The notes: generated by a model from the letters alone, not told the origin. A stretch of 64,000 bases of DNA from IMGVR_UViG_3300031344_000002:124001-188000, one strand, 5' to 3'. Numbered from the stretch's first letter, positions 13,709 to 27,196 are shown. Numbers and translations are program-made.

Positions 13709-14344
13709 TTAGAATGGTATTTTACGAATTAATGAATCTGGTATTAATTTATATTCTTTTGGCGGAATATAAAGAATTGTAATTGTTTTAATGCTTGGTA
13801 AACTAAAACCAACGAGCCAACTACTTTTACTTTTTGGTATATCATATATTAATTTTTTCTCGCATCGATATGCAATAGTATCTGATTGACTTGGCGCAAT
13901 GTATACTTCGTTCCATTTATCATAATCTTGTTGATATGACTTACAAAAAGTTCCAACATGAAAATTTTTTAATTTTACATCGTTGGTGTCATTAGTATAA
14001 AACAAAATTGTGATAGGAAATTGTTTATGCAACGTATCTTTTCTTTTAAAGAATTCTGTTGCATTATGATTTTCATAATAATTAAATCCTAAAACAACAT
14101 GACTTTTATGATAATCTTTAAAAAGACTTTTTTGCGTAAAAAATGTATGTAATGGACTTGTGGTAATAATTTCAGTTCTGGTTTGTAAACTTCCACGAAC
14201 TATGAAATTAGTTACAAGTGTAGCAACAAATGCTACACCACAAATAATTAAAAGTACTAAATATCTATTTTCCCAAAATTTGTTTTTGAAAAAACAAAGC
14301 GAAATTATTGATGTGATTATAGCTGATAATATAAACGTTAACAT
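13709..14344 (-). CDS. hypothetical membrane-anchored protein
   Basis: two N-terminal TM segments. Confidence 0.55.
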   Translation of the reverse strand: MLTFILSAIITSIISLCFFKNKFWENRYLVLLIICGVAFVATLVTNFIVRGSLQTRTEIITTSPLHTFFTQKSLFKDYHKSHVVLGFNYYENHNATEFFKRKDTLHKQFPITILFYTNDTNDVKLKNFHVGTFCKSYQQDYDKWNEVYIAPSQSDTIAYRCEKKLIYDIPKSKSSWLVGFSLPSIKTITILYIPPKEYKLIPDSLIRKIPF

Positions 14345-14373
14345 AATTTTAAGTTTTAAGTGTTAAAAAATTT

Positions 14374-15771
14374 TTACTTTTCTTCTTCAGTATCAACCCA
14401 TTCAATTCCGGGACAATAATCACTATAACTTGCATTGAAGTATTCACCAAATACCCCACTACTATTTTTGAGACCACTACCAAATGCTTTGAATATCTTC
14501 CAAATAAGGATACCTAATGGTGCAAGTATAAGTTTAAACATAAAACTATAGAATATAATTTTAATTGGTATACATATTACATAAAAAAATCCGTATGCAA
14601 ATCCAAGTACAATATATTTCACAGGATACCAAATTAAATAAATTAATGGTTCAACATACCAAACCTTTTTACCAATTTGATATTTATTAACTATATTTTG
14701 TAACCAACCGCTAATAAGCACATATAGTACATAAAAAATACCAATAATAATTGCAACACAACCAATAAATGCAAAAATCGCCCAATTTGCAATACACCAA
14801 TCAGTAACTACAATTATACAATATACTAATCCATTAACCCCAAAATAAGATACTGCAAGTAGGAATAAAGTAACAATGCCACCAACAAATTGTTTAGTTC
14901 TTTTAATAATGTTTTTTAAATTAGCTGGATTAAAAGTAAATGCGTTAGAAATTGAAGCAAAGATTTTCTCAAAACCATCATTAATTGGTTTCATTTTAGC
15001 ATCCCATTTAGCTTTTCTTTCTGCTTGAAGACGTTTACGTTCAAAATATTTACGTTTATTTTCTTCTTCTCTTTTTTGTGCTTCTTCTCTAATAAATTGA
15101 TGAGATTTTGCTAATTCTTCACGCCATTCTTCCCATTTTATTGTAAGTTCTTTTTTCTTTTTTTGATATTCTTCTGGATTTATTTTACCATCAAGATGAT
15201 ATTTTTCAAGCAAGAAATAATCTAAGAAATTCTCATCAGATTTGTTAAAATATATCTTTGCTGTTATTGGCATTTTTTTATTGCTATACCAATATATGTC
15301 CCATACTTGTCGTTCATCGACATTCATTATCCAATCATCAGTAAGTTTTTTTAGTCCCCAAACTAATGCTTTAGGAATTAATAAAAATATGAATTTAATT
15401 AAATATCCAAGCAATACAAATATTACCACAAATAGTGAAAACAGTAATAACCAGAAATAAGGACAACCATTTTGCATTGTTTTAGGTGTTGGTGCATTAC
15501 TGCGAAGTATGAATTTAATCAAACGATAATGCCATGATTTCATACTAACTCGCATAAGTTTAGGTTTTTCAGATAAAGTGATAAATTGTGCATCGCTTTC
15601 TTTTAAAGATACTTTCTCATCGATGGCAATATTACCATTATCAATTTCAACGACTTTTATGTAATAGCCATCAATACCATTTTTATAGAGAAATCCTCTA
15701 TAATGAGAAATAGTTGATTGATTATATTCAACCACTTTGTTCAACAATAATTCTAATTTTTCGTTTTTCAT
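14374..15771 (-). CDS. multi-pass membrane protein with coiled coil
   Basis: several hydrophobic segments; 465 aa. Confidence 0.6.
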   Translation of the reverse strand: MKNEKLELLLNKVVEYNQSTISHYRGFLYKNGIDGYYIKVVEIDNGNIAIDEKVSLKESDAQFITLSEKPKLMRVSMKSWHYRLIKFILRSNAPTPKTMQNGCPYFWLLLFSLFVVIFVLLGYLIKFIFLLIPKALVWGLKKLTDDWIMNVDERQVWDIYWYSNKKMPITAKIYFNKSDENFLDYFLLEKYHLDGKINPEEYQKKKKELTIKWEEWREELAKSHQFIREEAQKREEENKRKYFERKRLQAERKAKWDAKMKPINDGFEKIFASISNAFTFNPANLKNIIKRTKQFVGGIVTLFLLAVSYFGVNGLVYCIIVVTDWCIANWAIFAFIGCVAIIIGIFYVLYVLISGWLQNIVNKYQIGKKVWYVEPLIYLIWYPVKYIVLGFAYGFFYVICIPIKIIFYSFMFKLILAPLGILIWKIFKAFGSGLKNSSGVFGEYFNASYSDYCPGIEWVDTEEEK

Positions 15772-15772
15772 T

Positions 15773-16270
15773 TTATAATAAATTAATTAATTTAAAAATC
15801 TTATCTTTTATTCCGCTTTGTTTAATACCTTCGTTCGCTATTGGTGTTCTAATGAAATTATTAGGAAGCCATTTTGATAAATCAAGGTCATCAATTGCAA
15901 TAAATTTTTTAATATTATGGTCTTCAACATATTTTAATATTTCATTTGCACGACATTCTTCTAATTTGGCTAAATTGAAATATTTTATCCCCCATAATTG
16001 TGGGGTGACATCAAAAATTTTTGCATTAACCATATTTATTTCAAAAATGCGATTAAGTTGTTCAATAGTATAACTATCTTTCCAATCACTTGACAATACA
16101 ATAACTGGTTTTACTTTTTCAATAATTTGATTAAATACTTTTACGCATTTTTCATCAAATTTATAACGATGATATTCTGAATTCCATTTATCTTTATTAG
16201 TAAAATATTGTTCAGTAACACACAGAACTCCATCAATATCCGTAAACAAAATAATTGAATCATCATTCAT
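15773..16270 (-). CDS. HAD phosphatase, Swiss-Army-Knife RNA-repair family (HAD_SAK_2)
   Basis: FTDIDGVL, VLSSDW, IAIDD motifs. Confidence 0.85.
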   Translation of the reverse strand: MNDDSIILFTDIDGVLCVTEQYFTNKDKWNSEYHRYKFDEKCVKVFNQIIEKVKPVIVLSSDWKDSYTIEQLNRIFEINMVNAKIFDVTPQLWGIKYFNLAKLEECRANEILKYVEDHNIKKFIAIDDLDLSKWLPNNFIRTPIANEGIKQSGIKDKIFKLINLL

Positions 16271-16282
16271 TATTATAATTAT

Positions 16283-16831
16283 TTATTTATTTATATCATG
16301 TATATAATCCAATATTACCCAAAGTTTTTCAACTTCATCCATATTAAGATTATCTTTATACCAAGTTAATGCTTTTTTAAATATTGGTTTGCGATATTTA
16401 TATTCTTCAACATATTTTTTATACATCGAACTACCATGTTCTTTACTATATTGAGCATTGGCATAAATATCACACATTTTAAGAATTATTGCACGATAAT
16501 CTTTTACAGTTTTGGGCATTGTAAGTAAGTGTCGCATTAAACGATTTTCTGCAGGAACATCAGTAACTGCTAAAACAATATCGGCAACATCTTTACCACA
16601 AACTTCACAAATATTATTATATGTTAATTTTGCATCTTCAATACCATCATGAAGGAAAATTGCACCAATGGTTGGTTCAATATCTAATTTATTTTTATAT
16701 ATTAATACATGAGAATTAAATATGTCTTTCACCATATTAATATGAATAAAATAATTTCCACCATTATATTCACAATTAGCATCGTTATAAATTTTTTGTG
16801 CAAATCCTTTTATTTTTTCTAAATTTATCAT
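16283..16831 (-). CDS. HD-domain hydrolase, SpoT/Mesh1 small alarmone hydrolase-like
   Basis: YFIH..MV, LHDGIED, VLAVTD, LKMCD..AN motifs. Confidence 0.75.
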   Translation of the reverse strand: MINLEKIKGFAQKIYNDANCEYNGGNYFIHINMVKDIFNSHVLIYKNKLDIEPTIGAIFLHDGIEDAKLTYNNICEVCGKDVADIVLAVTDVPAENRLMRHLLTMPKTVKDYRAIILKMCDIYANAQYSKEHGSSMYKKYVEEYKYRKPIFKKALTWYKDNLNMDEVEKLWVILDYIHDINK

Positions 16832-16919
16832 GATGCAAAGATAAAACAAAATAATTAATATAAAAATTTTAAAGCAATATTATTATAAAAAATATTAATA
16901 ATTATTAACACCAATGTGT

Positions 16920-16951
16920 GAATTATGTAATTTTTTATCGGAATTATGTAA
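16920..16951 (+). promoter_or_regulatory. tandem direct repeat GAATTATGTAA with 21-bp period, candidate activator site
   Basis: identical 11-mers at 16920 and 16941 upstream of the ice-binding island. Confidence 0.45.
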
Positions 16952-17058
16952 CATTTATTTAAAACAGTTTTCTATTTATGATATATGATGTAATCATACT
17001 TATTCAACATTTACGTCTCTGTTAATTACACATAATAAATTAAGAACGAACATTAAAT

Positions 17059-18537
17059 ATGCAAAAAATGAAAACAAAAAAATTATTGTCAACTATTATG
17101 GGAATTATTATTACATTGATTGTATTAATCACATGTAAAAAAGATGATTTTAAAGAAATTGTTGGTACGTGCCCCCAATCACAAATAGAATTTACTGTTG
17201 CATTATCATCAAAACCTCTTGCTGGCGGAACAACAATTGGTGATGGAACATTTCCTAAAGATTCATCGATAACTGTTGCTGCAACTCCAAATACTGGATA
17301 TGTTTTTACTAATTGGACAAATGAAGCAACAATTGTTTCAACAAGTTCAAGTTATACATTTACTTTAACAAAAAATACAACATTAATTGCCAACTTTACT
17401 CCTGTAATTGCTGGAAATTTTGCTGTTATATTATCATCAAAACCTCTTGCTGGCGGAACAACAAATGGTGGTGGTTCATTTCTTGCTGGTTCTTCAGTAA
17501 CAATTAATGCAATACCAAATATTAATTATAAGTTTATTAATTGGACAAAAGGAACAACTATTGTTTCCGTAACCCCTAGTCATACGTTTATTTTAACAAA
17601 AGATACAACATTAATTGCAAATTTTTTACTTAATGCATATACATTAAATGTTACCGCAGTTAATGGTAGTGTCACAAAAACTCCCAATCAATTTACGTAT
17701 AATAGTGGTACTTCGGTTATCCTTATACCTATTCCTGCTTTAGGATATGTATTTAATTCTTGGAGTGGTGATGCAAGTGGTAATATAAATCCTTTAAATA
17801 TTACTATGAATTCTAATAAGAATATTATAGCTAATTTTACTGCAATTATTATTATTTGCCCTACAATTATTGATTTAGGATTATCAGGTAACTTTGCAAT
17901 ATTTGCAGAATCTGGAATTTCAACCACTGGTGTTACTTTAATTACAGGCGATATTGGAGTAAATCCTGTGACATCTACATCAATAACTGGATTTGGATTA
18001 ATTCTTCCAGCAGGTAGTGCATTTTCAACATCAAGTCTTGTTGCCGGAAAAATTTATGCTCCTGATTATGCTTCACCTTCACCTGCTAACATGGTAACCA
18101 CAAGTGGCAATATGCATACAGCATATACAACTGCAAATGGTTTAGTTGTTCCAGCACCTGTTAATGAATTCATGGCTGGTAATCTTAATGGTCAAACTTT
18201 AACTAAAGGTATTTACAAATGGAGTTCTGGCGTTTCAATAACAAATGGTATTGTATTGGATGGTGGTGGTGATAATTGTGCAACATTCATATTCCAAATA
18301 GCTAAAGACCTTACAGTAGCAAATAGTGCAATTATTACATTACAGAATGGTGCTCAAGCAAAGAATATATTTTGGATAGTTGCTGGTAGTGGTGCAATTT
18401 TAGGAACAAACGTTAATTTTAGTGGAAATATTTTATGTAAGACATTGATTTCAGTGAATACTGGTAGTAAAGTTACTGGTAGATTGCTTGCTCAAACGGC
18501 AGTTACATTAAATGCGGTAACAATAGTTAAACCATAA
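17059..18537 (+). CDS. ice-binding family protein (DUF3494) lipoprotein with Listeria-Bacteroides/InlB-B repeats
   Basis: LITC lipobox; three A.P..GY.F..W repeats; C-terminal FAIFAESGIST..ITGDIG..GIYKW..FIFQI..NIFW..GRLLAQTAVTL. Confidence 0.9.
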   Translation: MQKMKTKKLLSTIMGIIITLIVLITCKKDDFKEIVGTCPQSQIEFTVALSSKPLAGGTTIGDGTFPKDSSITVAATPNTGYVFTNWTNEATIVSTSSSYTFTLTKNTTLIANFTPVIAGNFAVILSSKPLAGGTTNGGGSFLAGSSVTINAIPNINYKFINWTKGTTIVSVTPSHTFILTKDTTLIANFLLNAYTLNVTAVNGSVTKTPNQFTYNSGTSVILIPIPALGYVFNSWSGDASGNINPLNITMNSNKNIIANFTAIIIICPTIIDLGLSGNFAIFAESGISTTGVTLITGDIGVNPVTSTSITGFGLILPAGSAFSTSSLVAGKIYAPDYASPSPANMVTTSGNMHTAYTTANGLVVPAPVNEFMAGNLNGQTLTKGIYKWSSGVSITNGIVLDGGGDNCATFIFQIAKDLTVANSAIITLQNGAQAKNIFWIVAGSGAILGTNVNFSGNILCKTLISVNTGSKVTGRLLAQTAVTLNAVTIVKP

Positions 18538-18567
18538 TAATTATAAAGAAAAATAATAAACAAAAAT

Positions 18568-19863
18568 ATGAAAACAAATATTATAAAGAAAATTTTTAAC
18601 ATTAAAACACTTACATTATGTATTTTAATGTTGATTGGTACAAATCTTCAATCACAAGAAAACCAGATAAATAAAAATGCTCAAAATTATGTAGATACTA
18701 CATTAACAAGAAAAGATACAATACCATCATGGTGGTTTGGTGCTGCTGTTGGTGGAAATTTAAATTATTACCGTGGTTCAACCCAAAATGTGAATGCTAA
18801 TTTATTTTCATATCCTGCTTTCCATAATGGTAATGGTATAGGATTATATATTGCACCTGTTGTTATATTTCATAATCCCGAAAAAGTTTTTGGTGGTATG
18901 TTCGAATTAGGATATGATAACCGTAAAGGTAAATTTAATGAAGTAACAACTCCATGTAATTGTCCTGCAGATTTAAAAACAAATTTAAGTTATATAACAA
19001 TTGAACCAAGTATACATATGACACCATTTAAAGGTAATTTTTATTTATTTGCCGGTCCTCGTATGGGAATTACAATCGGAAAATCATTTGTATATAATAA
19101 AGGTAAAAGTGTTGATGGATTAATACCAGCAGAACCTCAATTAAAAGGTAATTTTACTAATATGTATGAAGCAGTAATATCTATGCATATTGGTGCTGGA
19201 TATGATATTATACTTACATCAAATTTTAATGATAGTATTAAAGGTAGTAAAGAAGGTCGAAAATATAATGAAATGGTATTATCGCCATTTATAGATTTCC
19301 ATCCATACTTTGGTCAGAATCCACGCACAATTGAAACATGGAATCTAACTACAATTAGAATAGGTGCAGTACTTAAATTTGGTCATGTAAAGATTCAAGC
19401 AAAAACAAGACCAATTATAATACCAGTTTCTGATACAATAATACCAGTTCCTGTTCCTGTTGTTGTTATACCTGTTATTATAGTTGTTCCAGAACCAATA
19501 AAAATTACTACGGCATATACTTTATATTTCAAATTTGATGAATCAAACCTTGATAATCAAACAATTAATTATTTAGATAATTTAATTAATGATTTGAAAA
19601 AAGATACAACAATTGGTATTCAAATTAAATCATATGCAGATATGAGAGGAACTGAAGATTATAATATAAGTCTTTCAGAAAGACGTGGTAAAGCAGTTGT
19701 TGATTACATGATTAGTAAGGGTATTGATATATCAAGAATTAACTCAACAGCTTATGGTAAAACAAAAATATTTAATGAATATAAAGAAAGTACTAATGAA
19801 ATTGAATACGCATTAAATCGTAGGTCTAATATAATAGTAATTGGTATTGCAAGTAAAAAATAA
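18568..19863 (+). CDS. OmpA-family outer membrane protein (beta-barrel plus OmpA_C)
   Basis: signal peptide; YFKFDES, YADMRG..YN..LSERRG.AV, LNRRS motifs. Confidence 0.9.
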   Translation: MKTNIIKKIFNIKTLTLCILMLIGTNLQSQENQINKNAQNYVDTTLTRKDTIPSWWFGAAVGGNLNYYRGSTQNVNANLFSYPAFHNGNGIGLYIAPVVIFHNPEKVFGGMFELGYDNRKGKFNEVTTPCNCPADLKTNLSYITIEPSIHMTPFKGNFYLFAGPRMGITIGKSFVYNKGKSVDGLIPAEPQLKGNFTNMYEAVISMHIGAGYDIILTSNFNDSIKGSKEGRKYNEMVLSPFIDFHPYFGQNPRTIETWNLTTIRIGAVLKFGHVKIQAKTRPIIIPVSDTIIPVPVPVVVIPVIIVVPEPIKITTAYTLYFKFDESNLDNQTINYLDNLINDLKKDTTIGIQIKSYADMRGTEDYNISLSERRGKAVVDYMISKGIDISRINSTAYGKTKIFNEYKESTNEIEYALNRRSNIIVIGIASKK

Positions 19864-19891
19864 TTAGATTTTAATAAAAACTCCAAATAAA

Positions 19892-19996
19892 ATGATAATT
19901 AAGATAATATTATTTGTTATTATTGTAATAGTGGTAGTTGCCATATATTTCAAAATAATTAAAGAAAGAAAAAATAAAACAAAAAACTCGTTATAA
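19892..19996 (+). CDS. 34-aa single-TM protein (not in ORF track)
   Basis: MIIKIILFVIIVIVVVAIYFKIIKERKNKTKNSL. Confidence 0.4.
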   Translation: MIIKIILFVIIVIVVVAIYFKIIKERKNKTKNSL

Positions 19997-20032
19997 TCTT
20001 ATTGATTATAATATTTTAAAAAATATAAAATA

Positions 20033-20767
20033 ATGAAAAAAATATTTACATTATTTACTGTAATTAGTATTGCACTAAGTATTTTTATTGTTGAATGTAA
20101 AAAAGATAATAATTCTGTTATAAAAATTAATATCCCAATTCAAACAATAAAAATGACACAACCATCACTTGCAAGTATAACGAATTTTGTAATTCTTGCT
20201 GGTGCGTCAATTACAAGTACAAATGCAACTATAATTACAGGTAATCTTGGATTATGTCCGGGTACTTCTATAAGTGGTTTTCCACCAGCAATATTAAATG
20301 GAACTCTTCATGTTAATGATTTAATTGCAATTCAAGCAAAACTTGATTTGATTTCTGTTTATAATGATTTAATGGGACGTAAAAGTACTGATATTGTAAC
20401 ATTATCGGGAAATATTGGTGGTCTTACATTAACTCCGGGTTTATATAAATCAACATCTACGTTAGCAATATCTTCCGGTGATTTAACTTTTGATGCGAAA
20501 GGTGATACCAATGCTATTTTTATCATACAAATAGCATCAAGTCTTACAACTACTTCTGGACGTAAAGTTATTTTAACTGATGGTGCTGTTGCATCTAATA
20601 TTTATTGGCAAATAGGTAGTTCAGCAACATTTGGAACTACTTCAGTATTTAAAGGAACAATTATCGCATTACAATCAATTACATTTAATACTGGTGCAAC
20701 ACTTAATGGTAGAGCATTAGTAAGAAATGGTAGTATAACAATGATTGGTAATACAATTACAAAATAA
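20033..20767 (+). CDS. second DUF3494 ice-binding family protein
   Basis: FVILAGASIT..ITGNLG, TLTPGLY, IFIIQI, IYWQIGSSAT, LNGRAL motifs; signal peptide. Confidence 0.9.
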   Translation: MKKIFTLFTVISIALSIFIVECKKDNNSVIKINIPIQTIKMTQPSLASITNFVILAGASITSTNATIITGNLGLCPGTSISGFPPAILNGTLHVNDLIAIQAKLDLISVYNDLMGRKSTDIVTLSGNIGGLTLTPGLYKSTSTLAISSGDLTFDAKGDTNAIFIIQIASSLTTTSGRKVILTDGAVASNIYWQIGSSATFGTTSVFKGTIIALQSITFNTGATLNGRALVRNGSITMIGNTITK

Positions 20768-20775
20768 TAAATAAA

Positions 20776-20928
20776 ATGGGAACACTACTTTACATAATAG
20801 CATTTATATTTCTCATAGGATGGGCAATAGGTGTTTTTGTTTTTGCTGTTAGTGGATTTATTCACGTACTTCTAATTATTGCAATAATTGCAATATTATT
20901 TAGACTTATAAAAGGCAAAACAATATAA
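20776..20928 (+). CDS. lmo0937-family (DUF5670) small membrane protein (not in ORF track)
   Basis: MGTLLYIIAFIFLIGWAIG...GFIHVLLIIAIIAILFRLIKG. Confidence 0.75.
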   Translation: MGTLLYIIAFIFLIGWAIGVFVFAVSGFIHVLLIIAIIAILFRLIKGKTI

Positions 20929-20958
20929 AAATAATATTATTAATTAAAAACAAATAAA

Positions 20959-21144
20959 ATGAGTTTAATAAGTATTTTAATTGTACTAATCGTAGTAGGA
21001 ATTCTCCTATGGCTTGTTAATACATACATCCCATTAGACGGAAAAATTAAACAAATTCTTAATATCGTAGTAATAATTGCTATAGTGGTATGGTTACTTA
21101 AGGCATTTGGACTATTTGCTTATTTAAAAGGCATACACTTTTAA
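20959..21144 (+). CDS. Thivi_2564-family membrane protein
   Basis: IVLIVVGILLWLVNTYIPLDGKIKQILNIVV. Confidence 0.75.
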   Translation: MSLISILIVLIVVGILLWLVNTYIPLDGKIKQILNIVVIIAIVVWLLKAFGLFAYLKGIHF

Positions 21145-21232
21145 AAACAATTCTTTTATTTTTAAGAAATGAATGAATGGGATAATTATGTATTTATTCC
21201 ATCCATTTTTTGGATATTTCATTTATTTGTTA

Positions 21233-21240
21233 TATATTTG
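21233..21240 (+). promoter_or_regulatory. Bacteroidota primary-sigma -7 box TAnnTTTG (representative; also at 27696, 32509, 40344, 43008, 50461, 63211 on +, and 11349, 16836 on -)
   Basis: intergenic and co-oriented with the downstream gene at each site. Confidence 0.6.
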
Positions 21241-21307
21241 TCAAACTTTTTAATAAAATATTGTAACCTTTATTATGGAAGATTCGTATTATAGAATAAA
21301 AAATATT

Positions 21308-21526
21308 ATGAATATAATTAAAGTTAGTGGATTTCATATTTTCTCCAAAGGAGATGTAACAATTGATACGAATGATATTCAATGGAAATTACAAGATAAT
21401 TTTTATTTTGATAATGAAGAAGAACTTGAAGTTTTTCAAAAAGACATAAAAACTTTGTTTGAAAATTATTGTGGTGAAGTTACTGTAAAAACTTTTGAAG
21501 AAGTCGATGGAAGCAATATTAAATAA
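21308..21526 (+). CDS. hypothetical protein
   Basis: ORF track; start moved downstream of the promoter motif. Confidence 0.5.
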   Translation: MNIIKVSGFHIFSKGDVTIDTNDIQWKLQDNFYFDNEEELEVFQKDIKTLFENYCGEVTVKTFEEVDGSNIK

Positions 21527-22094
21527 ATATAATTCGGTCCTATTCTTAGATATTGATGGTGTAGTAAATTCGGAGCTATTTTATAAAGAAAAATTTGCGC
21601 ATTTGGATAAATATAATAACATACCTTTATATAGGGTAGTAAAAAAACATTTACTTAAATTGGTTAAATCAAAAGAAATTTTGGAATTGGATTTTTATAA
21701 AAGTCAAATGTGTTCAATTCGAATTGGTTGGTTAAATGCATTATGTGAAGAAACTAATTCAGCAGTTGTTCTTTCAGCTTCAATGAGAAGTCATCATGAT
21801 GTGGAAAAATTAAATCAGATTTTTAAATATTGTGGAGCGACATTCACAATTATTGATAAAACCCCATATACTGGATATGAAAGAGGAACTGAAATTAGTA
21901 AATGGTTAAAAGAAAATTGTATGAAATGGTTTGGTGTTCATTATTATGATTTTTATCGTTTCGCTATAATTGATGACGATAGTGATGTTCTTTTAAATCA
22001 ACAATTTAACTTTTTTCAAACAGATAATTATTCAGGTTTAACCCCAAATATTTGTTATAGAATAAAAAGATTTTTAACACATAAAACATTTTAG
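21507..22094 (+). CDS. HAD phosphatase, HAD_SAK_2 family
   Basis: FLDIDGVVNS, VVLSAS, RGTEI..WL, IIDDDSD. Confidence 0.85.
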   Translation: MEAILNKYNSVLFLDIDGVVNSELFYKEKFAHLDKYNNIPLYRVVKKHLLKLVKSKEILELDFYKSQMCSIRIGWLNALCEETNSAVVLSASMRSHHDVEKLNQIFKYCGATFTIIDKTPYTGYERGTEISKWLKENCMKWFGVHYYDFYRFAIIDDDSDVLLNQQFNFFQTDNYSGLTPNICYRIKRFLTHKTF

Positions 22095-22096
22095 AT

Positions 22097-22321
22097 ATGA
22101 AAAAAATTATATTTTTTTTATTTGTTGTACTAATTACAATAGATACATTTTTTATTATTAAAATTAAACAAAAACATGATAGTTTTAAACCAAATTACGA
22201 GCAAGGACTTCGGGATGGTTTTATAAGAACTTTAAAATATCTTGAACATAAAAATTATCTTACAAAAGATACTGTTATAATTAAAAACAGAGAAATTGAT
22301 AGTATTTTACATCCAAAATAA
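22097..22321 (+). CDS. small membrane-anchored protein
   Basis: N-terminal TM. Confidence 0.5.
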   Translation: MKKIIFFLFVVLITIDTFFIIKIKQKHDSFKPNYEQGLRDGFIRTLKYLEHKNYLTKDTVIIKNREIDSILHPK

Positions 22322-22327
22322 ATAATT

Positions 22328-22519
22328 ATGAGTAATATTAGGATTCAATCAACAATTAGACAAGGAAATGTCTATATTAGACAAAGTGATATCATTAAAT
22401 CATTATATTCTGATTTAGCAAATGCTACTGATGATATTCTTAAAAAATATTTAAGAGCGCAAATTGAATTATGGGAAGAATATGAAATAAATATTTTGAA
22501 ACAAGCAAATTTATTATAA
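22328..22519 (+). CDS. hypothetical protein
   Basis: ORF track. Confidence 0.5.
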   Translation: MSNIRIQSTIRQGNVYIRQSDIIKSLYSDLANATDDILKKYLRAQIELWEEYEINILKQANLL

Positions 22520-22521
22520 TT

Positions 22522-23271
22522 ATGATAAAGTTTTTAATTCAAAAAATCAATAAAGAAATTAGACATGATTTTGCATTTACATTGCTTGAATCTGTAAATT
22601 ATAATAATTGGTATAATCCCGCATCAAATATGCGTGTAATGTTCTTTAATACTAAAGCTGAACAAACAGATTTTGTGTTCAATGAACGATTTCATACTTA
22701 TATTCCTATTGGTAGTGTTGAATTTGTATCAGCATTTTTACGACAATTTTATAATAAAGAATTAAAACCATTAAATGTTCCTGAAGAATTATTTGGTTTC
22801 GCAGGTCGTGATATACTTAATGGTAATCAAATGTCTTTAAATGAAACTAATGTTGGTACATATTTTATTAAAAGTAATGATAAAATAAAAGGATTTACTG
22901 AAGTAATTAGAATGGACTCTAAGCATTTAGTAAATATTCCAATAGGTAATTATCAAATATCAGAATATATAATCATTGATAGTGAATGGCGTGCATTTGT
23001 GTATCAAAATAAATTAGTTGGATTACAAAACTATTTGGGAGATTTTACCATGTTCCCAAATATTAATAAAATTAATGGCATGATTAAAGCATTTAAATCA
23101 GCACCTATTGCATATACTCTTGATGTGGGTATTAGTAATTCAGATACATTTGTAGTTGAATGCAATTCTATGACAAGTGTTGGTCTTTATGGATTTTCTG
23201 ACTATAGAATATTACCACATATGTTTTATAGATGGTTTTATCAATACGTAAGAAATATTAAAAATAAATAA
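22522..23271 (+). CDS. ATP-grasp protein (DUF4343/R2K-like)
   Basis: PIGSVEFV, FIKS..KIK, SEWRAFV, YTLDVG, VVECN..SVGLYG. Confidence 0.75.
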   Translation: MIKFLIQKINKEIRHDFAFTLLESVNYNNWYNPASNMRVMFFNTKAEQTDFVFNERFHTYIPIGSVEFVSAFLRQFYNKELKPLNVPEELFGFAGRDILNGNQMSLNETNVGTYFIKSNDKIKGFTEVIRMDSKHLVNIPIGNYQISEYIIIDSEWRAFVYQNKLVGLQNYLGDFTMFPNINKINGMIKAFKSAPIAYTLDVGISNSDTFVVECNSMTSVGLYGFSDYRILPHMFYRWFYQYVRNIKNK

Positions 23272-23445
23272 TAATATGAAAAATAAAAATATGAATCGTT
23301 TTTGTGAATATCATGTATATACAAAAGAAAATCCTGATGGAACTGATTGCGCAGCACATTTAGCTGAAGCAAGAGTTTTTAAATGTCCATATGACATTGA
23401 AAAGGCAAAACAAAAATGTTCGGATTATGAATCAATAAAAGATAT

Positions 23446-24825
23446 ATGAAAATTAAACAGATTTTTGACGAAATTGCTAATGAATCGAGTACTAATGAGA
23501 AGATGAATATCCTTTCAAAGTATAAAGATAATGAACTTTTAGTACGAGTATTATATTTAGCTAATTCAAAACGAATTAAGTTCTATATTAAGCAAATTCC
23601 TTCACATTCTGGAAGTTTAAAAATGTCATTAACTGGTGCGCTAGATTTGTTGTCGACTTTGAGTGATAGAAGTGTTACTGGTTATGATGCAATAGCACAT
23701 TTAATAAATATACTTAATTCAGTTGACCCCGATGATGGATATATTATTGAACGTATTATTGAAAAGGATTGCAAAATTGGTATGGGAACTAGAAATATCA
23801 ATAAGGTGATTCCTGATTTAATAGAACGAACTGGTTATATGGGTTGTAAGCCATATTCAAAGGAATTAATTAATAAATTGTTAGCTAAAGGTACTTGTTA
23901 TAGTCAAGAAAAAATGGATGGTAGATTTGTTAATATTATTATTCAAGGTGGAGAAGTATTGAATGAATCTCGTCAAGGTGAACCAACATTATTAGATAAT
24001 CCAGCATTTATGCAGGAATTAACGCAATTAAAAGATTGTGTATTGAATGCTGAATTAACTATGGGCAAATACAATGGAATTCCAATTTCACGCTATGAAA
24101 GTAATGGAATTATTGCATCTTTAATAAGTATAGCCAATAAAAAATCTGCTGGCGATGATGTTACAAAAGATATTCAAAAACTTGAAGCTAAACATTTACC
24201 ATATAGAGAAGCATTAGATTTAATTCGAGTTACTGCTTGGGATATTTTAACTATTGATGAATATTTTACAAGGAAATGTAATAGGAAATATAAAGAAAGA
24301 TTTGTAGATTTAAATTCAACCTTACAAGGATTTAAAATGTTATCGGTTGTTGAAACTAGAGAAGTTTCTACCATTGAAGAAGTAATGGCACATTTTAATG
24401 AAATTGTTTCTCGTGGTAATGAAGGTACTGTCGTTAAAAGTATGGATGGAGTATGGGCAGATACAAAACCTTCATATCAAGTGAAAATTAAACTGGAAAT
24501 TAATTTAGATTTAAAAATTGTTGGATTTAATTATGGAACAGGAAAGAATTTAAAACTGATTTCATCACTTAATGTTGAATCCGAAGATGGTTTATTAAAA
24601 ACTTCACCAACCGGAATAAATGAAGATGATATGGAATATATTACCACTAATCAAGATAAATTATTAAATACAATTGTTGAAGTTAAATGTTCTGGTTTGT
24701 CACAAGATAGTAGGGGAAATTATTCAGCACTTCATCCTGTTTTTAAATTACTTAGAACAGATAAGACAATTGCCAATACATTAACAGAATGTATTGAAAT
24801 TAATAAATCCTCATCATTACTATAA
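23446..24825 (+). CDS. ATP-dependent DNA ligase (T4 gp30-like)
   Basis: QEKMDG motif I, EGTVVK, VKIK, C-terminal OB fold with HPVF..LRTDK. Confidence 0.92.
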   Translation: MKIKQIFDEIANESSTNEKMNILSKYKDNELLVRVLYLANSKRIKFYIKQIPSHSGSLKMSLTGALDLLSTLSDRSVTGYDAIAHLINILNSVDPDDGYIIERIIEKDCKIGMGTRNINKVIPDLIERTGYMGCKPYSKELINKLLAKGTCYSQEKMDGRFVNIIIQGGEVLNESRQGEPTLLDNPAFMQELTQLKDCVLNAELTMGKYNGIPISRYESNGIIASLISIANKKSAGDDVTKDIQKLEAKHLPYREALDLIRVTAWDILTIDEYFTRKCNRKYKERFVDLNSTLQGFKMLSVVETREVSTIEEVMAHFNEIVSRGNEGTVVKSMDGVWADTKPSYQVKIKLEINLDLKIVGFNYGTGKNLKLISSLNVESEDGLLKTSPTGINEDDMEYITTNQDKLLNTIVEVKCSGLSQDSRGNYSALHPVFKLLRTDKTIANTLTECIEINKSSSLL

Positions 24826-24840
24826 TTAATTAAAAATATT

Positions 24841-25056
24841 ATGATAAAATTTTTAAAAGAAAATGGTTATCCAATGACAATATTTATTGAAACTTCAAAA
24901 ATAATAGACCTTGAAAATGAATTTAATGAATTCGAATCAATAGTTACTGATAAAAAAAGTAATGAAATATTAAGATTTAGTCATCATAATTTACGTGATA
25001 GAATTCATTGGGTATCTGGATTCTTCACTGCATTAAGAATGAATAATGGAAATTAA
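24841..25056 (+). CDS. hypothetical protein
   Basis: ORF track. Confidence 0.5.
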   Translation: MIKFLKENGYPMTIFIETSKIIDLENEFNEFESIVTDKKSNEILRFSHHNLRDRIHWVSGFFTALRMNNGN

Positions 25057-25336
25057 AGGAACTTATAAATTAATATATAGCGTAGATAAACATGAAGAAG
25101 AATTACGAGTTGATGTTGAATTAAAACCAAACGAATTTCCATTAAAACCTTTTCAAAATGTTTATCGTGGCATTGCTTATGTAAACGGTTCAATATATAA
25201 TGGAATTGATATTTCTCATTCAGTAAATGCTAAATTTGCTGCAGAAGAAATTGGTTTAAATTTAAAAGAAGAATTAAAGAAAAATTTGCGACAAGAAGGT
25301 AAAAGTTTTAGATTAAAAAAAGAAGAAATAAAATGA
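25046..25336 (+). CDS. hypothetical protein
   Basis: ORF track. Confidence 0.5.
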   Translation: MEIKGTYKLIYSVDKHEEELRVDVELKPNEFPLKPFQNVYRGIAYVNGSIYNGIDISHSVNAKFAAEEIGLNLKEELKKNLRQEGKSFRLKKEEIK

Positions 25337-25650
25337 TAAATGAAGAATTTAAAGAACGGTTATTAAAAGAAATAATTCTTTGTAAAGAATTAAAAGAACT
25401 TACTATTGAAATTAAAGATTTGTTTTTCGAACTAATTAATAGTGAAATCGAAAAACGAGATATGAAAAGATTTAAATTAAATGAAGAAGAAAAAATTATT
25501 TTCGAAAATAATGCATATATTGCATGTAATAATAATGCATTAAAATTTAACTCAAATAAAACTAATAATGCATATGCATATGTAGTAACAATTATTAGAT
25601 GTTCTTTTTCAGATACAATTGTAAAAAGAAGAAAAGGTCTTGAAATTTAA
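25333..25650 (+). CDS. small protein resembling region 2 of T4 gp55-type sigma factors
   Basis: KFNSNKTNNAYAYVVTIIRCSF resembles F.P.KS.N.FAY.T.I...F. Confidence 0.4.
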   Translation: MINEEFKERLLKEIILCKELKELTIEIKDLFFELINSEIEKRDMKRFKLNEEEKIIFENNAYIACNNNALKFNSNKTNNAYAYVVTIIRCSFSDTIVKRRKGLEI

Positions 25651-25675
25651 AACTAAAATAATTTTAATATAAAAT

Positions 25676-26680
25676 ATGAAAAGTTTTACTGAAATTGGTC
25701 AATATCGACAAGTAGTTAGAGAAGTTAAATCACATCATGATTATACTGGTAAAGATGAAAATGGCGATGCCATATATAGTCATACATCTCCATATCCAGT
25801 ATTAACATTTCGTGGTACAGTTAAATTGCATGGAACTAATAGTTCTATTGTTAAATACATTAATGATGGTCAGATTAAATATGATTTTCAAAGTAGAGAA
25901 AGAATAATAGATTTGACCGGAAAAGATGGGGATAATTGTGGTTTCATGAGAGAATTTCAAAAAAAAGATTATCAAAAACTTTTTGATGATATTGATTGTA
26001 AATCATCAATTGCAATTTTTGGCGAATGGTGTGGAAATGGTATTCAAAAGGGCGTTGCAATTGTAGAATTGCCAAAAATGTTTGTAATATTTGCGGTTAA
26101 AATCGATGATGTATATCAAGATATGAATAGCTTCAAACATTTAAAAAATGAAGAACAAAATATTTACAATATTTTACAATTTCCTACATTTTCAATTGAT
26201 ATTGATTTTAACAATCCTGAATTAATTCAAAATAAATTGGTTGAATTAACCACTAATGTTGAAAAAGAATGCCCTGTTGCTAAACAATTTGGTATTACTG
26301 GTATTGGAGAAGGAATTGTTTGGGAACACATCAATGGCAATGAAAGATATATTTTTAAAGTTAAAGGTGAAAAACATCAAAATAGTAAAGTAAAAACTCT
26401 CACAACAGTTAATGTTGAAGAAATTGAAAACATTAAAACATTTGTTGAATATGCAGTAACTGAAAATAGATTATTGCAAGGAATTGATAAAATGAGAGAA
26501 CTTGGTTTACCTATTGAAAGTAAAACCACTGGTGATTATTTAAGATGGGTTTATAATGATGTTATTAAAGAAGAAAGTGATACTATTGCAGAAAATAATA
26601 TTGATGTAAAGAAAATAGGTTCTGCAATTTCAGCAAAAGCCAGAATGTTTTGGTTAAATTATTTAAACACGCATTTATAA
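25676..26680 (+). CDS. RNA ligase, Rnl2 family
   Basis: VKLHGTN, QSR, FGEWCG, GEGIVW, FKVKGEKH. Confidence 0.88.
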   Translation: MKSFTEIGQYRQVVREVKSHHDYTGKDENGDAIYSHTSPYPVLTFRGTVKLHGTNSSIVKYINDGQIKYDFQSRERIIDLTGKDGDNCGFMREFQKKDYQKLFDDIDCKSSIAIFGEWCGNGIQKGVAIVELPKMFVIFAVKIDDVYQDMNSFKHLKNEEQNIYNILQFPTFSIDIDFNNPELIQNKLVELTTNVEKECPVAKQFGITGIGEGIVWEHINGNERYIFKVKGEKHQNSKVKTLTTVNVEEIENIKTFVEYAVTENRLLQGIDKMRELGLPIESKTTGDYLRWVYNDVIKEESDTIAENNIDVKKIGSAISAKARMFWLNYLNTHL

Positions 26681-26722
26681 TGGAAAAAAAATTAATTAAA
26701 TCAAATATAAAAAAGTAATATT

Positions 26723-27196
26723 ATGAAAAAAACATTATTAACAATTATGATTCTATCACTTTCATTAGTGGTAATGGCACAAAATCCTTTTAAGTATTTT
26801 TTTAAATCGAATAATGAGATTGAAACTAGTACCAATACTTTAAAATCGGGAATGCTCAATACAACTCCAGTTCCAATCCCACAATGGTTTTTTAAATTAG
26901 ATGGGTCAGTATCTCTTTTAAGATTTCAGTATGTTGGAGGTACGCAAGGAGTAGAAGTAAGTACTTTCAAAATGGTTGGATTGGGAGTTTCTTATCAAGA
27001 AATTAAAATTATAAATAGCAAAAATTATGCCGATTTAACATTAAAGATTTTACTTGATTTACCTACAATAAATAATGAAAAAATGGGCGGATGTTTTGGA
27101 GTATCTTTATGGGATAATAAAATTGGTGCAATCATTGGTTATACTGTAGATGAAAAATATCCTTTTCTGGGCATAAACGGTAGTTATAACTTTTAA
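26723..27196 (+). CDS. secreted protein, possible small outer-membrane beta-barrel
   Basis: signal peptide (VMA-Q), amphipathic strands, terminal GSYNF. Confidence 0.5.
   Translation: MKKTLLTIMILSLSLVVMAQNPFKYFFKSNNEIETSTNTLKSGMLNTTPVPIPQWFFKLDGSVSLLRFQYVGGTQGVEVSTFKMVGLGVSYQEIKIINSKNYADLTLKILLDLPTINNEKMGGCFGVSLWDNKIGAIIGYTVDEKYPFLGINGSYNF

What the first reader, a model, noticed from the sequence alone, without database searches (positions are those of the whole stretch)
17059..21144. Host-like island with two ice-binding (DUF3494) proteins, OmpA and small membrane proteins
Seen: a DUF3494 lipoprotein with three stalk repeats, OmpA, a second DUF3494 protein, and lmo0937-like and Thivi_2564-like genes, all intact and co-oriented at a strand switch. 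Established: DUF3494 beta-solenoids bind ice and inhibit recrystallisation, although not every member is active. Inference: an operon captured from a Bacteroidota host that remodels the infected cell surface for freeze tolerance or adhesion, which is unusual phage cargo. The AT-rich codon usage like the flanks argues against a chimeric assembly.
Basis: partly seen in the sequence, partly recalled or inferred. Interest (0 to 1): 0.65.

Follow-up and report, generated by a model that had tools for sequence, protein, structure and literature searches.

The report
Phage-borne ice-binding surface protein cassette
A large uncultured tailed phage, and at least seven diverged relatives, carry a compact cassette copied long ago from Bacteroidota bacteria that should decorate the infected cell's surface with stalked proteins closely related to proven ice-binding proteins, which suggests phages can equip their hosts for freezing habitats, although ice binding itself is untested.

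Summary
Window 17059-21144 holds five intact, co-oriented genes: a stalked DUF3494 lipoprotein, a beta-barrel/OmpA protein, a small DUF3494 lipoprotein, an lmo0937/DUF5670 protein and a Thivi_2564 protein. They sit at a strand switch inside a contractile-tailed phage record of 218 kb.

It is not an assembly artefact. The same junctions occur in at least six other assemblies, and the island's GC3 matches the phage's.

It is also not a recent capture. A core of stalked DUF3494 + OmpA + Thivi_2564 occupies the same slot in at least seven diverged phage contigs. Phage copies of both main genes are monophyletic. The DUF3494 head is 90-93% conserved with dN/dS 0.04-0.11, while its neighbours are 45-66% identical.

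The origin is a Bacteroidota two-gene module: in 72 of 79 bacterial loci a DUF3494 gene lies directly upstream of the OmpA homologue.

The small DUF3494 protein is 69% identical to EfcIBP (PDB 6EIO), a tested ice-binding protein. The stalked head is 50-54% identical to Cryosericum ice-binding proteins (TM 0.95).

Best reading: surface display of ice-binding heads on infected Bacteroidota cells, for cryoprotection or ice adhesion. Activity, expression, host and habitat remain untested. Virus-encoded PF11999 genes have been reported before; the conserved multi-gene module appears to be new.

The parts
16850..17058 (.). Divergent intergenic region at the strand switch, presumably holding the cassette's promoter. 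It contains an exact direct repeat, GAATTATGTAA, at 16920-16930 and 16941-16951.
   Evidence: Sequence read. The repeat was found and is not enriched across the window. The sigma-70 scan was uninformative: 51 sites against 58 expected.
17059..18537 (+). Stalked DUF3494 lipoprotein ('IBP1'), 492 aa (probably 489 aa from Met4 at 17068). Signal peptide and lipobox Cys26 followed by K-K-D-D, about 17059-17148. Three InlB-B-repeat beta-sandwich stalk domains, about 17194-17868. DUF3494 beta-solenoid head, 17875-18534.
   Evidence: Pfam. AlphaFold model with pLDDT 87: three beta-sandwich domains plus a solenoid braced by one helix. Foldseek TM 0.95 and 50-54% identity to Candidatus Cryosericum odellii ice-binding proteins 9LI0/9LHN/9LHS; phmmer E 1.9e-65. 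Lipobox and export signal conserved in relatives. Head dN/dS 0.04-0.11.
18568..19863 (+). OmpA-like outer-membrane protein, 431 aa. Signal peptide. N-terminal beta-barrel, about aa 54-276 (18727-19395). Pro/Val/Ile-rich linker, aa 279-314 (19402-19509). C-terminal OmpA-type peptidoglycan-binding domain, aa 316-425 (19513-19842).
   Evidence: Pfam OmpA. Relatives also score OMP_b-brl_2. AlphaFold model. Foldseek: E. coli OmpA full-length model, and Pal, OprF and PorE C-terminal domains. Invariant D358, R360 and R373 and the 'PCNCP' motif in the alignment. Phage copies form one clade, SH-aLRT 99.
19892..19996 (+). Possible 34-aa single-helix membrane ORF in the 170-bp gap between the OmpA gene and the second DUF3494 gene. 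Uncertain; may be a chance ORF in AT-rich DNA.
   Evidence: The relative has only a 20-bp gap at this position, so the ORF is not conserved.
20033..20767 (+). Small DUF3494 protein ('IBP2'), 244 aa, EfcIBP type. N-terminal signal with a lipobox-like Cys22 followed by K-K-D-N, but with an atypical Glu at position -1.
   Evidence: Pfam E 2.8e-60. phmmer against PDB 6EIO (EfcIBP): E 1e-88, 145 of 210 identities = 69%. About 5000 relatives; named ones at 66-71% identity are in Bacteroidia MAGs. The phage trio is monophyletic within that clade. Lipobox comparison.
20776..20928 (+). lmo0937-family / DUF5670 small membrane protein, 50 aa, with two hydrophobic helices.
   Evidence: Pfam DUF5670 E 8.5e-12. 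NCBIfam NF033488 at 47.3 bits against a cut-off of 30. Present in some relatives' cassettes and within 7 kb of 21 of 79 bacterial modules.
20959..21144 (+). Thivi_2564-family small membrane protein, 61 aa, with two hydrophobic helices. It is the third conserved core gene of the phage cassette.
   Evidence: NCBIfam NF041949 at 77.8 bits against a cut-off of 33. phrog_23151 E 3.1e-7. Found downstream of OmpA in every related phage locus with enough sequence.

Best explanation
The island is a phage-adapted, shortened copy of a Bacteroidota cell-surface module. During infection the host's own export machinery would handle the products as follows.

1. The OmpA-like protein inserts its beta-barrel in the outer membrane and ties it to peptidoglycan through its C-terminal domain.
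2. The stalked DUF3494 lipoprotein is lipidated at Cys26 and flipped to the cell surface by the Bacteroidota lipoprotein export signal (K-K-D-D). Its beta-solenoid head then stands on three Ig-like repeats above the membrane.
3. The small EfcIBP-type DUF3494 protein is added at or near the surface.
4. The two small membrane proteins sit in a membrane.

The heads most likely bind ice. This would either inhibit recrystallisation around the infected cell or hold it to ice or ice-veined particles, keeping the infected cell intact through freezing until the phage completes its cycle.

Shown here: gene content, domain architecture, folds, bacterial origin, conservation in a phage clade, and strong purifying selection on the head.

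Inferred, not shown: export route, surface exposure, cooperation between the OmpA protein and the lipoprotein, ice binding, and the benefit to the phage.
For: Architecture and sorting signals. The export signal K-(D/E)2 is defined for Bacteroidetes surface lipoproteins in PMC5080379.

Closeness to proven ice binders: the small protein is 69% identical over 210 aa to EfcIBP (6EIO). A review reports for EfcIBP a thermal hysteresis of 0.53 C at 50 uM and protection of bacterial cells from freezing damage (PMC10992025). The stalked head has TM 0.95 and 50-54% identity to Cryosericum odellii ice-binding proteins.

A functional pair: a DUF3494 gene lies directly upstream of the OmpA homologue in 72 of 79 Bacteroidota loci (examples) and in all related phage loci.

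Maintained by selection in phages: the cassette occupies the same slot in at least seven diverged phage contigs. Phage clades have SH-aLRT 99 for the head, the small DUF3494 protein and the barrel. The head's dS of 0.55-1.46 equals its neighbours', but its dN/dS is 0.04-0.11 against 0.21-0.34 for OmpA and 0.25-0.59 for the stalk.

Long residence and a real junction.

Precedent: PF11999 auxiliary genes in Arctic viral contigs, with homologue abundance peaking at -1 to +3 C (PMC11515562).
Against: - No ice-binding assay, no expression data and no habitat metadata could be obtained.
- Both proteins fall far below NCBIfam's curated ice-binding equivalog cut-off.
- The same DUF3494 subfamilies are widespread in Bacteroidota MAGs from groundwater, lakes and unspecified metagenomes. 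The literature treats DUF3494 as both ice-binding and substrate-binding (PMC12337378).
- All solved DUF3494 structures are ice binders by ascertainment, so nearest-structure arguments are biased.
- The 90-93% conservation of the head exceeds what ice binding usually imposes on this family, which hints at an additional or different constraint.
- The small protein's lipobox has Glu at -1, unlike all relatives, so its processing is doubtful.
- The complex prediction gave no verdict.
Confidence: 0.5

Rival explanations
1. Same surface-display machinery, but the DUF3494 heads bind something other than ice, such as a polysaccharide, mineral, plant or particle surface, or other cells. The cassette would then change the adhesion or aggregation of infected cells rather than their freeze tolerance.
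For: [quoted passage not shown] Bacterial relatives carry adhesin-type domains (Big_5, Ig, PKD, CHU_C) and lie next to PorP/SprF genes. Relatives occur in MAGs from many habitats not known to be icy. The NCBIfam ice-binding equivalog cut-off is not met. The very high conservation of the head would suit a specific ligand.
Against: The small protein is 69% identical to EfcIBP, a demonstrated ice binder. The head's nearest solved relatives are all titled ice-binding proteins. No non-ice ligand is established for any close relative.
Confidence: 0.27
2. Superinfection exclusion or receptor masking. The phage places an outer-membrane protein and surface lipoproteins on the infected cell to block adsorption or DNA entry by competing phages, or to stop progeny re-adsorbing to lysing cells. 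Known phage outer-membrane lipoproteins work this way (for example T5 Llp and the Cor proteins; from general knowledge).
For: Exported lipoprotein and OmpA-type proteins are typical phage 'moron' cargo. The OmpA protein hits PHROG families, one of them labelled 'moron ... membrane protein'. The cassette sits among early-type nucleic-acid metabolism genes. The strong constraint on the head could reflect binding to a conserved host receptor.
Against: The pair is a common chromosomal module in Bacteroidota (72 of 79 loci) with no phage or defence context. PADLOC gave only a generic MotB-domain hit. Exclusion proteins are usually small and fast-evolving, unlike a 90-93% conserved ice-binding-type solenoid.
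Confidence: 0.13
3. Artefact or passenger: either a mis-assembled piece of host DNA, or a neutral, decaying insertion with no role in the phage.
For: The content is host-like, and the island's GC is slightly higher (0.28-0.35) than the phage mean of 0.26.
Against: An independent contig is 99.98% identical across both borders, and further assemblies share the junction. GC3 is 0.07-0.13, within the phage range, against 0.30-0.34 in bacterial homologues. All frames are intact. The cassette is conserved at the same locus in diverged phages under purifying selection.
Confidence: 0.03

Closest known systems
EfcIBP (PDB 6EIO), ice-binding protein from the bacterial consortium of the Antarctic ciliate Euplotes focardii
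   Same: The small DUF3494 protein (20033-20767) is 69% identical over 210 residues (E 1e-88). It is the same size, a single DUF3494 domain and has an N-terminal export signal. EfcIBP shows thermal hysteresis and protects cells from freezing damage (PMC10992025).
   Different: This copy is phage-encoded and sits in a five-gene cassette. Its lipobox has Glu at -1. Its activity is untested.
Bacteroidota two-gene module: stalked DUF3494 lipoprotein followed by a ~650-690-aa beta-barrel/OmpA protein (for example Sphingobacteriales bacterium 17-39-43, L035; Bacteroidetes GCA_013390605.1, L036)
   Same: Same gene order and orientation, same lipobox with 'CKKDD', same InlB-B-repeat stalk and DUF3494 head, and the same barrel motifs (PSWWFGAA, TPCNCPADL, PYFGQ.PR..ETWN).
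   Different: The phage versions are shortened: 3 (or 2) stalk repeats and no Big_5 domain, against Big_5 plus 5 repeats in the bacterial protein. The OmpA partner lacks about 250 residues between the linker and the C-terminal domain. The phage adds Thivi_2564, and in some lineages DUF5670 and the small DUF3494 protein. Identity to any bacterial copy is at most 78% for the head and about 58% for the barrel. No searchable paper mentions DUF3494 together with OmpA.
Virus-encoded 'ice-binding-like' (PF11999) auxiliary genes reported from polar viromes (PMC11515562; the Southern Ocean viral antifreeze protein cited there)
   Same: The Pfam family is carried on viral contigs and is proposed to cryoprotect the host. 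Flavobacteriales/Bacteroidota affinity is noted there too.
   Different: Those reports are single-gene annotations. This is a conserved multi-gene surface module with an OmpA partner and small membrane proteins, traced through a phage clade with selection analysis, and with 69% identity to an assayed protein.
Ice adhesins with stalk plus ice-binding head (Shewanella frigidimarina SfIBP_1, PDB 6BG8; Marinomonas primoryensis MpIBP, from general knowledge)
   Same: Ig-like repeats carry a terminal ice-binding domain away from the cell surface. The 6BG8 head is a DUF3494 domain, matched at E 1.2e-27 and TM 0.82.
   Different: The anchor here is an N-terminal lipid with a Bacteroidota export signal. 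The stalk is short (three repeats). It is encoded by a phage.
Candidatus Cryosericum odellii ice-binding proteins (PDB 9LHN, 9LI0, 9LHS)
   Same: Nearest solved structures to the stalked protein's head: phmmer E 1.9e-65; Foldseek TM 0.95, rmsd 1.2-1.7 A, 50-54% identity.
   Different: These are single-domain proteins from another phylum, with no stalk or lipid anchor in the crystallised constructs. No paper on them was found in the library.

Membership tests
Pfam PF11999 Ice_binding (DUF3494) | Profile HMM score above the gathering threshold (28.7 bits) | tested here: met
   223.6 bits for the stalked protein and 204.0 bits for the small one.
Pfam PF11999 Ice_binding (DUF3494) | Discontinuous beta-solenoid braced by one long alpha-helix | tested here: met
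   The stalked protein's model (pLDDT 87) has a solenoid plus a helix at 342-357, with TM 0.95 to solved DUF3494 structures. The fold of the small protein is inferred from its 69% identity to 6EIO.
Functional ice-binding proteins | Measured ice-recrystallisation inhibition, thermal hysteresis or ice shaping | not testable with these tools
   Only homology is available: 69% to EfcIBP, and 50-54% to Cryosericum ice-binding proteins.
NCBIfam NF045625 IBP_CFB (ice-binding protein, equivalog) | Score at or above the curated cut-off of 400 bits | tested here: not met
   156.6 and 111.8 bits. The proteins are related to this curated equivalog but are not members of it.
OmpA family outer-membrane proteins | C-terminal OmpA-like peptidoglycan-binding domain (PF00691) retaining the conserved Asp/Arg pair | tested here: met
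   PF00691 at 60.5 bits. D358, R360 and R373 are invariant in 22 relatives. The fold matches Pal, OprF and OmpA C-terminal domains. Binding itself was not assayed.
OmpA family outer-membrane proteins | N-terminal membrane beta-barrel preceded by a signal peptide | tested here: met
   The model has long antiparallel strands at 54-276, with block pLDDT mostly 77-93. PF13568 passes its threshold in close relatives P0122 and P0124 but was not reported for the window's own protein. The top Foldseek hit is the full-length E. coli OmpA model.
Bacteroidota surface-exposed lipoproteins (lipoprotein export signal, PMC5080379) | Lipobox Cys followed by K-(D/E)2 or Q-A-(D/E)2 | tested here: met
   Stalked protein...LIT-C-K-K-D-D-F, conserved in phage and bacterial relatives.
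Bacteroidota surface-exposed lipoproteins (lipoprotein export signal, PMC5080379) | The same, for the small DUF3494 protein | tested here: inconclusive
   ...IVE-C-K-K-D-N-N has only one acidic residue after K, and Glu at -1 where all relatives have Gly, Ala or Ser.
NCBIfam NF033488 lmo0937 family / Pfam DUF5670 | Score above the curated cut-off | tested here: met
   47.3 bits against 30; Pfam 45.4 against 23.5.
NCBIfam NF041949 Thivi_2564 family | Score above the curated cut-off | tested here: met
   77.8 bits against 33.
Phage auxiliary ('moron') gene cassette | Host-derived genes flanked on both sides by phage genes on a viral genome, reproducibly | tested here: met
   Phage genes on both sides. 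Virion genes on the record. The same junctions in independent assemblies and in diverged relatives.
Known anti-phage defence systems (PADLOC) | Match to a defence-system protein model | tested here: not met
   Only a weak MotB-domain match to ZorB for the OmpA C-terminal domain (E 3.7e-6). The other proteins gave nothing.

The most novel reading that the evidence does not exclude
A clade of large uncultured Bacteroidota phages has for a long time maintained a dedicated 'virocell surface kit': a peptidoglycan-tethered outer-membrane barrel that partners with a stalked, surface-flipped ice-binding lipoprotein, plus small membrane proteins. The kit would actively make infected cells freeze-tolerant or ice-adherent, so that phage reproduction in seasonally frozen peat, sediment or ice depends on phage-encoded ice binding. 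The near-invariance of the head would reflect a dual constraint: the ice lattice and its OmpA-type partner. The same work would also define a previously undescribed DUF3494-OmpA surface complex that is widespread in Bacteroidota.
Probability: 0.3. Interest if true: 0.8.

Novelty: new variant of a known kind. Interest (0 to 1): 0.62.

Why it matters
Ice-binding proteins are a textbook case of horizontally spread cold adaptation, and phages are an obvious but poorly documented vehicle for them. This cassette is a concrete, experimentally tractable example. One of its proteins is 69% identical to an assayed ice binder. It is paired with a membrane anchor, conserved across a phage clade and under strong purifying selection. 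If the proteins are active, it would show that phages can invest in host freeze survival or ice attachment, which bears on viral ecology in thawing permafrost, fens and glacial systems. The work also reveals a near-universal DUF3494-OmpA gene pair in Bacteroidota, which suggests how these proteins are mounted on the cell surface. Finally, the unusually invariant phage head domain may be a useful compact scaffold for ice-binding studies.

Tried and rejected
- **Read coverage across the borders.** Independent assemblies served as the substitute.
- **Complex prediction.** The mature stalked lipoprotein with the OmpA barrel gave no verdict (score 0.00). This is evidence neither for nor against binding.
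- **Habitat from accession numbers.** No paper holds them. Labels such as 'fen_' MAGs, 'WOOD18-1' and 'GFS_' hint at fen, permafrost and glacier-fed systems, but I could not verify this and do not rely on it.
- **Literature on 9LI0/9LHN.** The search returned only unrelated materials-science papers. The entry titles came from the fold search instead.
- **Promoter and terminator scan.** At chance level. The GAATTATGTAA repeat is not a recurrent phage motif.
- **Recent gene exchange as the cause of the 90-93% head identity.** Rejected, because synonymous divergence equals that of the neighbouring genes.
- **Identifying a donor lineage.** The bacterial locus with the nearest head (L093, 78%) does not have the nearest barrel, and head and barrel identities are uncorrelated (rho 0.09).
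- **Defence-system membership.** Rejected.
- **Terminase.** The Pfam search of the record found none, but the record is only 66% complete. Tail sheath and baseplate genes settle the virion question.
- **Large representative-protein search and protein atlas.** Not used, because the word search and the family scans left nothing open.
- **Other constraints.** No alternative genetic code was needed.

Full report
**1. What is there.**

The window is bases 124001-188000 of a 218,381-bp IMG/VR virus record that CheckV rates 66% complete. The record is a contractile-tailed phage:
- tail sheath (phrog_23, E 1.5e-64);
- baseplate wedge, DNA polymerase and helicases;
- ATP-dependent DNA ligase, RNA ligase, a Dda-like helicase and HNH endonucleases inside the window.

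Its polymerase is only 23-30% identical to that of any cultured phage, so the lineage is uncultured.

Genes up to 16849 run on the minus strand: an HD phosphohydrolase, a HAD_SAK_2 protein and a 465-aa membrane protein. From 17059 the five island genes run on the plus strand. They are followed by a second HAD_SAK_2 gene, an R2K ATP-grasp gene and the ligases. Details are in the observation check.

**2. Anatomy of the products.**

*Stalked DUF3494 protein.* Its parts, in order:
- a signal helix;
- a lipobox Cys followed by K-K-D-D;
- a disordered tether with a second conserved Cys ('VGTCP');
- three beta-sandwich InlB-B-repeat domains;
- a DUF3494 beta-solenoid head braced by one helix.

These come from an AlphaFold model with mean pLDDT 87. 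The head superposes on the ice-binding proteins of Candidatus Cryosericum odellii (9LI0, 9LHN, 9LHS) at TM 0.95 and 50-54% identity. It also superposes on LeIBP, FfIBP, TisAFP, ColAFP and SfIBP_1. C-K-K-D-D fits the K-(D/E)2 lipoprotein export signal, which sends Bacteroidetes lipoproteins to the cell surface (PMC5080379). The motif is conserved in phage and bacterial relatives.

*OmpA-like protein.* It models as a signal peptide, a beta-barrel (about 54-276), a disordered Pro/Val/Ile linker and an OmpA-type C-terminal domain. The C-terminal domain matches Pal, OprF, the PorE C-terminal domain and OmpA. The Asp/Arg positions D358, R360 and R373 are invariant in 22 relatives.

*Small DUF3494 protein.* It is 69% identical (145 of 210 residues, E 1e-88) to EfcIBP (6EIO). 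Published summaries report for EfcIBP a thermal hysteresis of 0.53 C at 50 uM and protection of bacterial cells from freezing damage (PMC10992025). The two DUF3494 domains in the island are only 34% identical to each other.

*Two small proteins.* Each has two hydrophobic helices. The founding member of the lmo0937 family is a sigma-B-dependent stress-regulon gene in Listeria (PMC7690807). This is only a weak hint for the phage protein.

**3. Not an artefact.**

- IMG/VR contig 3300028653_000065 comes from a different metagenome and is 99.98% identical to window 14033-26764, so it spans both borders.
- The identical small DUF3494 protein lies next to the same downstream phage genes in two Logan assemblies and at least one ENA assembly.
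- Island GC3 is 0.07-0.13 (0.21 for Thivi_2564). That falls within the range of 40 other phage genes (mean 0.14, range 0.08-0.21). Bacterial homologues average 0.30-0.34.

**4. Where it came from.**

- *Small DUF3494 protein.* It has about 5000 relatives. Named ones at 66-71% identity are in Williamwhitmania, Bacteroidales and Bacteroidia MAGs. In bacteria these genes typically follow PAS histidine-kinase and response-regulator genes, and often precede larger DUF3494 adhesin-like proteins.
- *Stalked protein.* Its named bacterial relatives are ~755-aa lipoproteins with Big_5, five InlB-B repeats and a DUF3494 head, at about 50% identity. They come from Daejeonella, Mucilaginibacter, Lutibacter, Gillisia, Psychroflexus and Dysgonamonadaceae.
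- *OmpA protein.* Its named relatives are ~680-aa Bacteroidota proteins. There are 515 matching stretches in species-representative genomes, and the best 79 are almost all Bacteroidota, with at most about 44% full-length identity.

The key result is synteny. In 72 of those 79 bacterial loci a DUF3494 domain ends within 1.2 kb directly upstream of the OmpA homologue on the same strand. Six of the remaining seven have less than 1.5 kb of contig upstream of the OmpA gene, so the test could not be applied to them (gene maps). DUF3494 followed by OmpA is therefore a bacterial two-gene module. No searchable paper mentions the two terms together.

DUF5670 lies within 7 kb of 21 of the 79 modules, and Thivi_2564 within 7 kb of 3, at variable positions. 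The phage proteins are shortened relative to the bacterial ones. There are fewer stalk domains, and about 250 residues are missing from the OmpA partner.

**5. A conserved phage module, not a recent capture.**

Relatives at 56-66% OmpA identity lie on phage-like contigs with the same flanking genes:
- the phage, which has three DUF3494 genes and a GIY-YIG gene inserted in the cassette;
- L029 and L031;
- L033/L034;
- six further IMG/VR contigs besides the window phage's own copy.

The shared core is stalked DUF3494, then OmpA, then Thivi_2564. DUF5670 is present in some of these phages. The small EfcIBP-type gene is present only in the window phage and the phage.

In trees, the phage copies form single clades with SH-aLRT 99 for all three proteins:
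- the stalked head: 12 proteins, of which four were confirmed directly on phage contigs, and three more phage loci carry 90-93% heads by tblastn;
- the small DUF3494 protein: three proteins, nested within the Bacteroidia EfcIBP-like clade;
- the OmpA barrel: 8 phage copies against 79 bacterial ones.

The donor lineage could not be resolved.

**6. Selection.**

Against the window phage, the neighbouring genes in these relatives are 45-66% identical, and the DNA ligase is 76% identical. The 220-aa DUF3494 head is 90-93% identical.

Its synonymous divergence (dS 0.55-1.46) is like that of the adjacent stalk (0.57-1.41) and OmpA gene (0.70-1.51). Recent exchange between phages is therefore not the cause. 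Its dN/dS is 0.04-0.11, against 0.21-0.34 for OmpA, 0.25-0.59 for the stalk and 0.115 for the DNA ligase.

The head is the most constrained protein segment in the neighbourhood, which shows that it matters to the phage. The estimates are Nei-Gojobori values in a very AT-rich genome, and several flank comparisons are saturated.

**7. Interpretation.**

The anatomy points to a surface-display device: a barrel tied to peptidoglycan, plus a surface-flipped lipoprotein holding a DUF3494 head on a short stalk. A second, small DUF3494 protein and two small membrane proteins complete the cassette.

The host is inferred to be a member of the Bacteroidota, from the export signal and from the source of every relative.

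Ice binding is the most likely activity, for cryoprotection of the infected cell or for attachment to ice. The reasons are the 69% identity to EfcIBP and the head's close fit to solved ice binders. I put this at about 0.5.

The main rival (about 0.27) keeps the same machinery but has it bind a non-ice substrate. DUF3494 proteins are regarded as both ice- and substrate-binding (PMC12337378), and the relatives occur in many habitats. Superinfection exclusion is possible but less likely (about 0.13). An artefact is effectively excluded.

**8. Novelty.**

No relative of the small DUF3494 protein was found among 50,697 deposited phage genomes. A motif-limited IMG/VR scan found only this clade plus four distant carriers of a different kind. 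One of those has a 2746-aa ORF with two DUF3494 domains and no OmpA partner.

Single PF11999 'ice-binding-like' auxiliary genes have already been reported in Arctic viral contigs, and an antifreeze protein in Southern Ocean viromes (PMC11515562). A phage carrying DUF3494 is therefore not new in kind. The new elements are:
- the conserved multi-gene module with its OmpA partner;
- its descent from a widespread Bacteroidota gene pair;
- its persistence across a phage clade;
- the exceptional constraint on the head.

**9. Limits.**

- There was no activity assay, no expression data and no host assignment.
- Habitat metadata could not be obtained.
- The complex prediction gave no verdict.
- Trees used the quick search, with SH-aLRT support only.
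- The IMG/VR and genome scans rely on short peptide patterns and are not exhaustive.

Noticed in passing
window 15773-16270 (-) and 21495-22094 (+); also 22522-23271, 23446-24825, 25676-26680: Two HAD_SAK_2 paralogues (about 26% identical to each other, judged from cross-hits of the two probes on a relative's copy) flank the island on opposite strands. Next to them are an R2K ATP-grasp gene, an ATP-dependent DNA ligase and an RNA ligase, which together look like an RNA-repair neighbourhood. The arrangement is conserved in the related phages.
   Followed up: partly
window 20033-20767, codons 19-22: The small DUF3494 protein has Glu at lipobox position -1 (IVE|C). All 119 other top relatives, including the two phage ones, have Gly, Ala or Ser there when a Cys is present. 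The exact protein recurs in several assemblies, so this is not a sequencing error. Signal peptidase II processing may be impaired.
   Followed up: partly
window 19892-19996 (+): A 34-aa ORF encoding one hydrophobic helix and a basic tail lies in the 170-bp gap between the OmpA gene and the small DUF3494 gene. It is not conserved in the relative, where the gap is 20 bp.
   Followed up: partly
window 16920-16930 and 16941-16951: An exact direct repeat, GAATTATGTAA, occurs twice, 21 bp apart, in the divergent intergenic region upstream of the cassette. It is not enriched elsewhere in the window.
   Followed up: yes
related phage contigs: ENA ERZ1426851/ERZ1426849; L029; L033:6214-7359; L034:11872-12585: Mobile elements pepper the same region in relatives. 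A GIY-YIG gene lies between DUF5670 and Thivi_2564. L029 has LAGLIDADG and GIY-YIG genes. The RNA ligase of L034 contains an intein. A TnpB-like (Cas12f1-like_TNB) gene lies upstream of the cassette in L033.
   Followed up: no
L133:1824-10064 (IMGVR_UViG_3300029922_000007, 166 kb; also L131, L132): An unrelated viral contig with 46% GC encodes a 2746-aa protein containing two DUF3494 domains and has no OmpA partner. This is a different use of the domain in viruses, possibly as a fibre or adhesin.
   Followed up: partly
L023, L025, L027 (bacterial loci): In three Bacteroidia lineages the small EfcIBP-type DUF3494 gene lies directly downstream of PAS histidine-kinase and response-regulator genes. 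In L025 a CsbD-like stress protein gene follows the DUF3494 genes. In L023 the cluster continues with a CHU_C protein, PorP/SprF and a PD40/OmpA protein. This suggests regulated, stress-linked surface clusters.
   Followed up: partly
window 14374-15771 (-): A 465-aa multi-helix membrane protein (phrog_944, labelled 'moron ... membrane protein', E 1.7e-12) lies just upstream of the cassette's flank. It is conserved at 45-53% identity in relatives. Its function is unknown.
   Followed up: no
L006:1392-1480 (G000:C1:61392-61480): The only tRNA gene found on the scanned parts of the record (the window and the loci outside it) is a tRNA-Met of 89 nt, which is unusually long for that type.
   Followed up: no
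cassette versus flanks in L029, L034, L039: Synonymous divergence of the cassette genes (about 0.55-0.9) tends to be lower than that of the flanking phage genes (about 0.9 to saturated) in the same genome pairs. This could reflect codon constraints or occasional exchange of the cassette between phages.
   Followed up: no
Logan run SRR7151659 (L030, L032): Two different members of the cassette-bearing phage clade, with OmpA 66% and 56% identical to the window's, occur in the same sequencing run.
   Followed up: no
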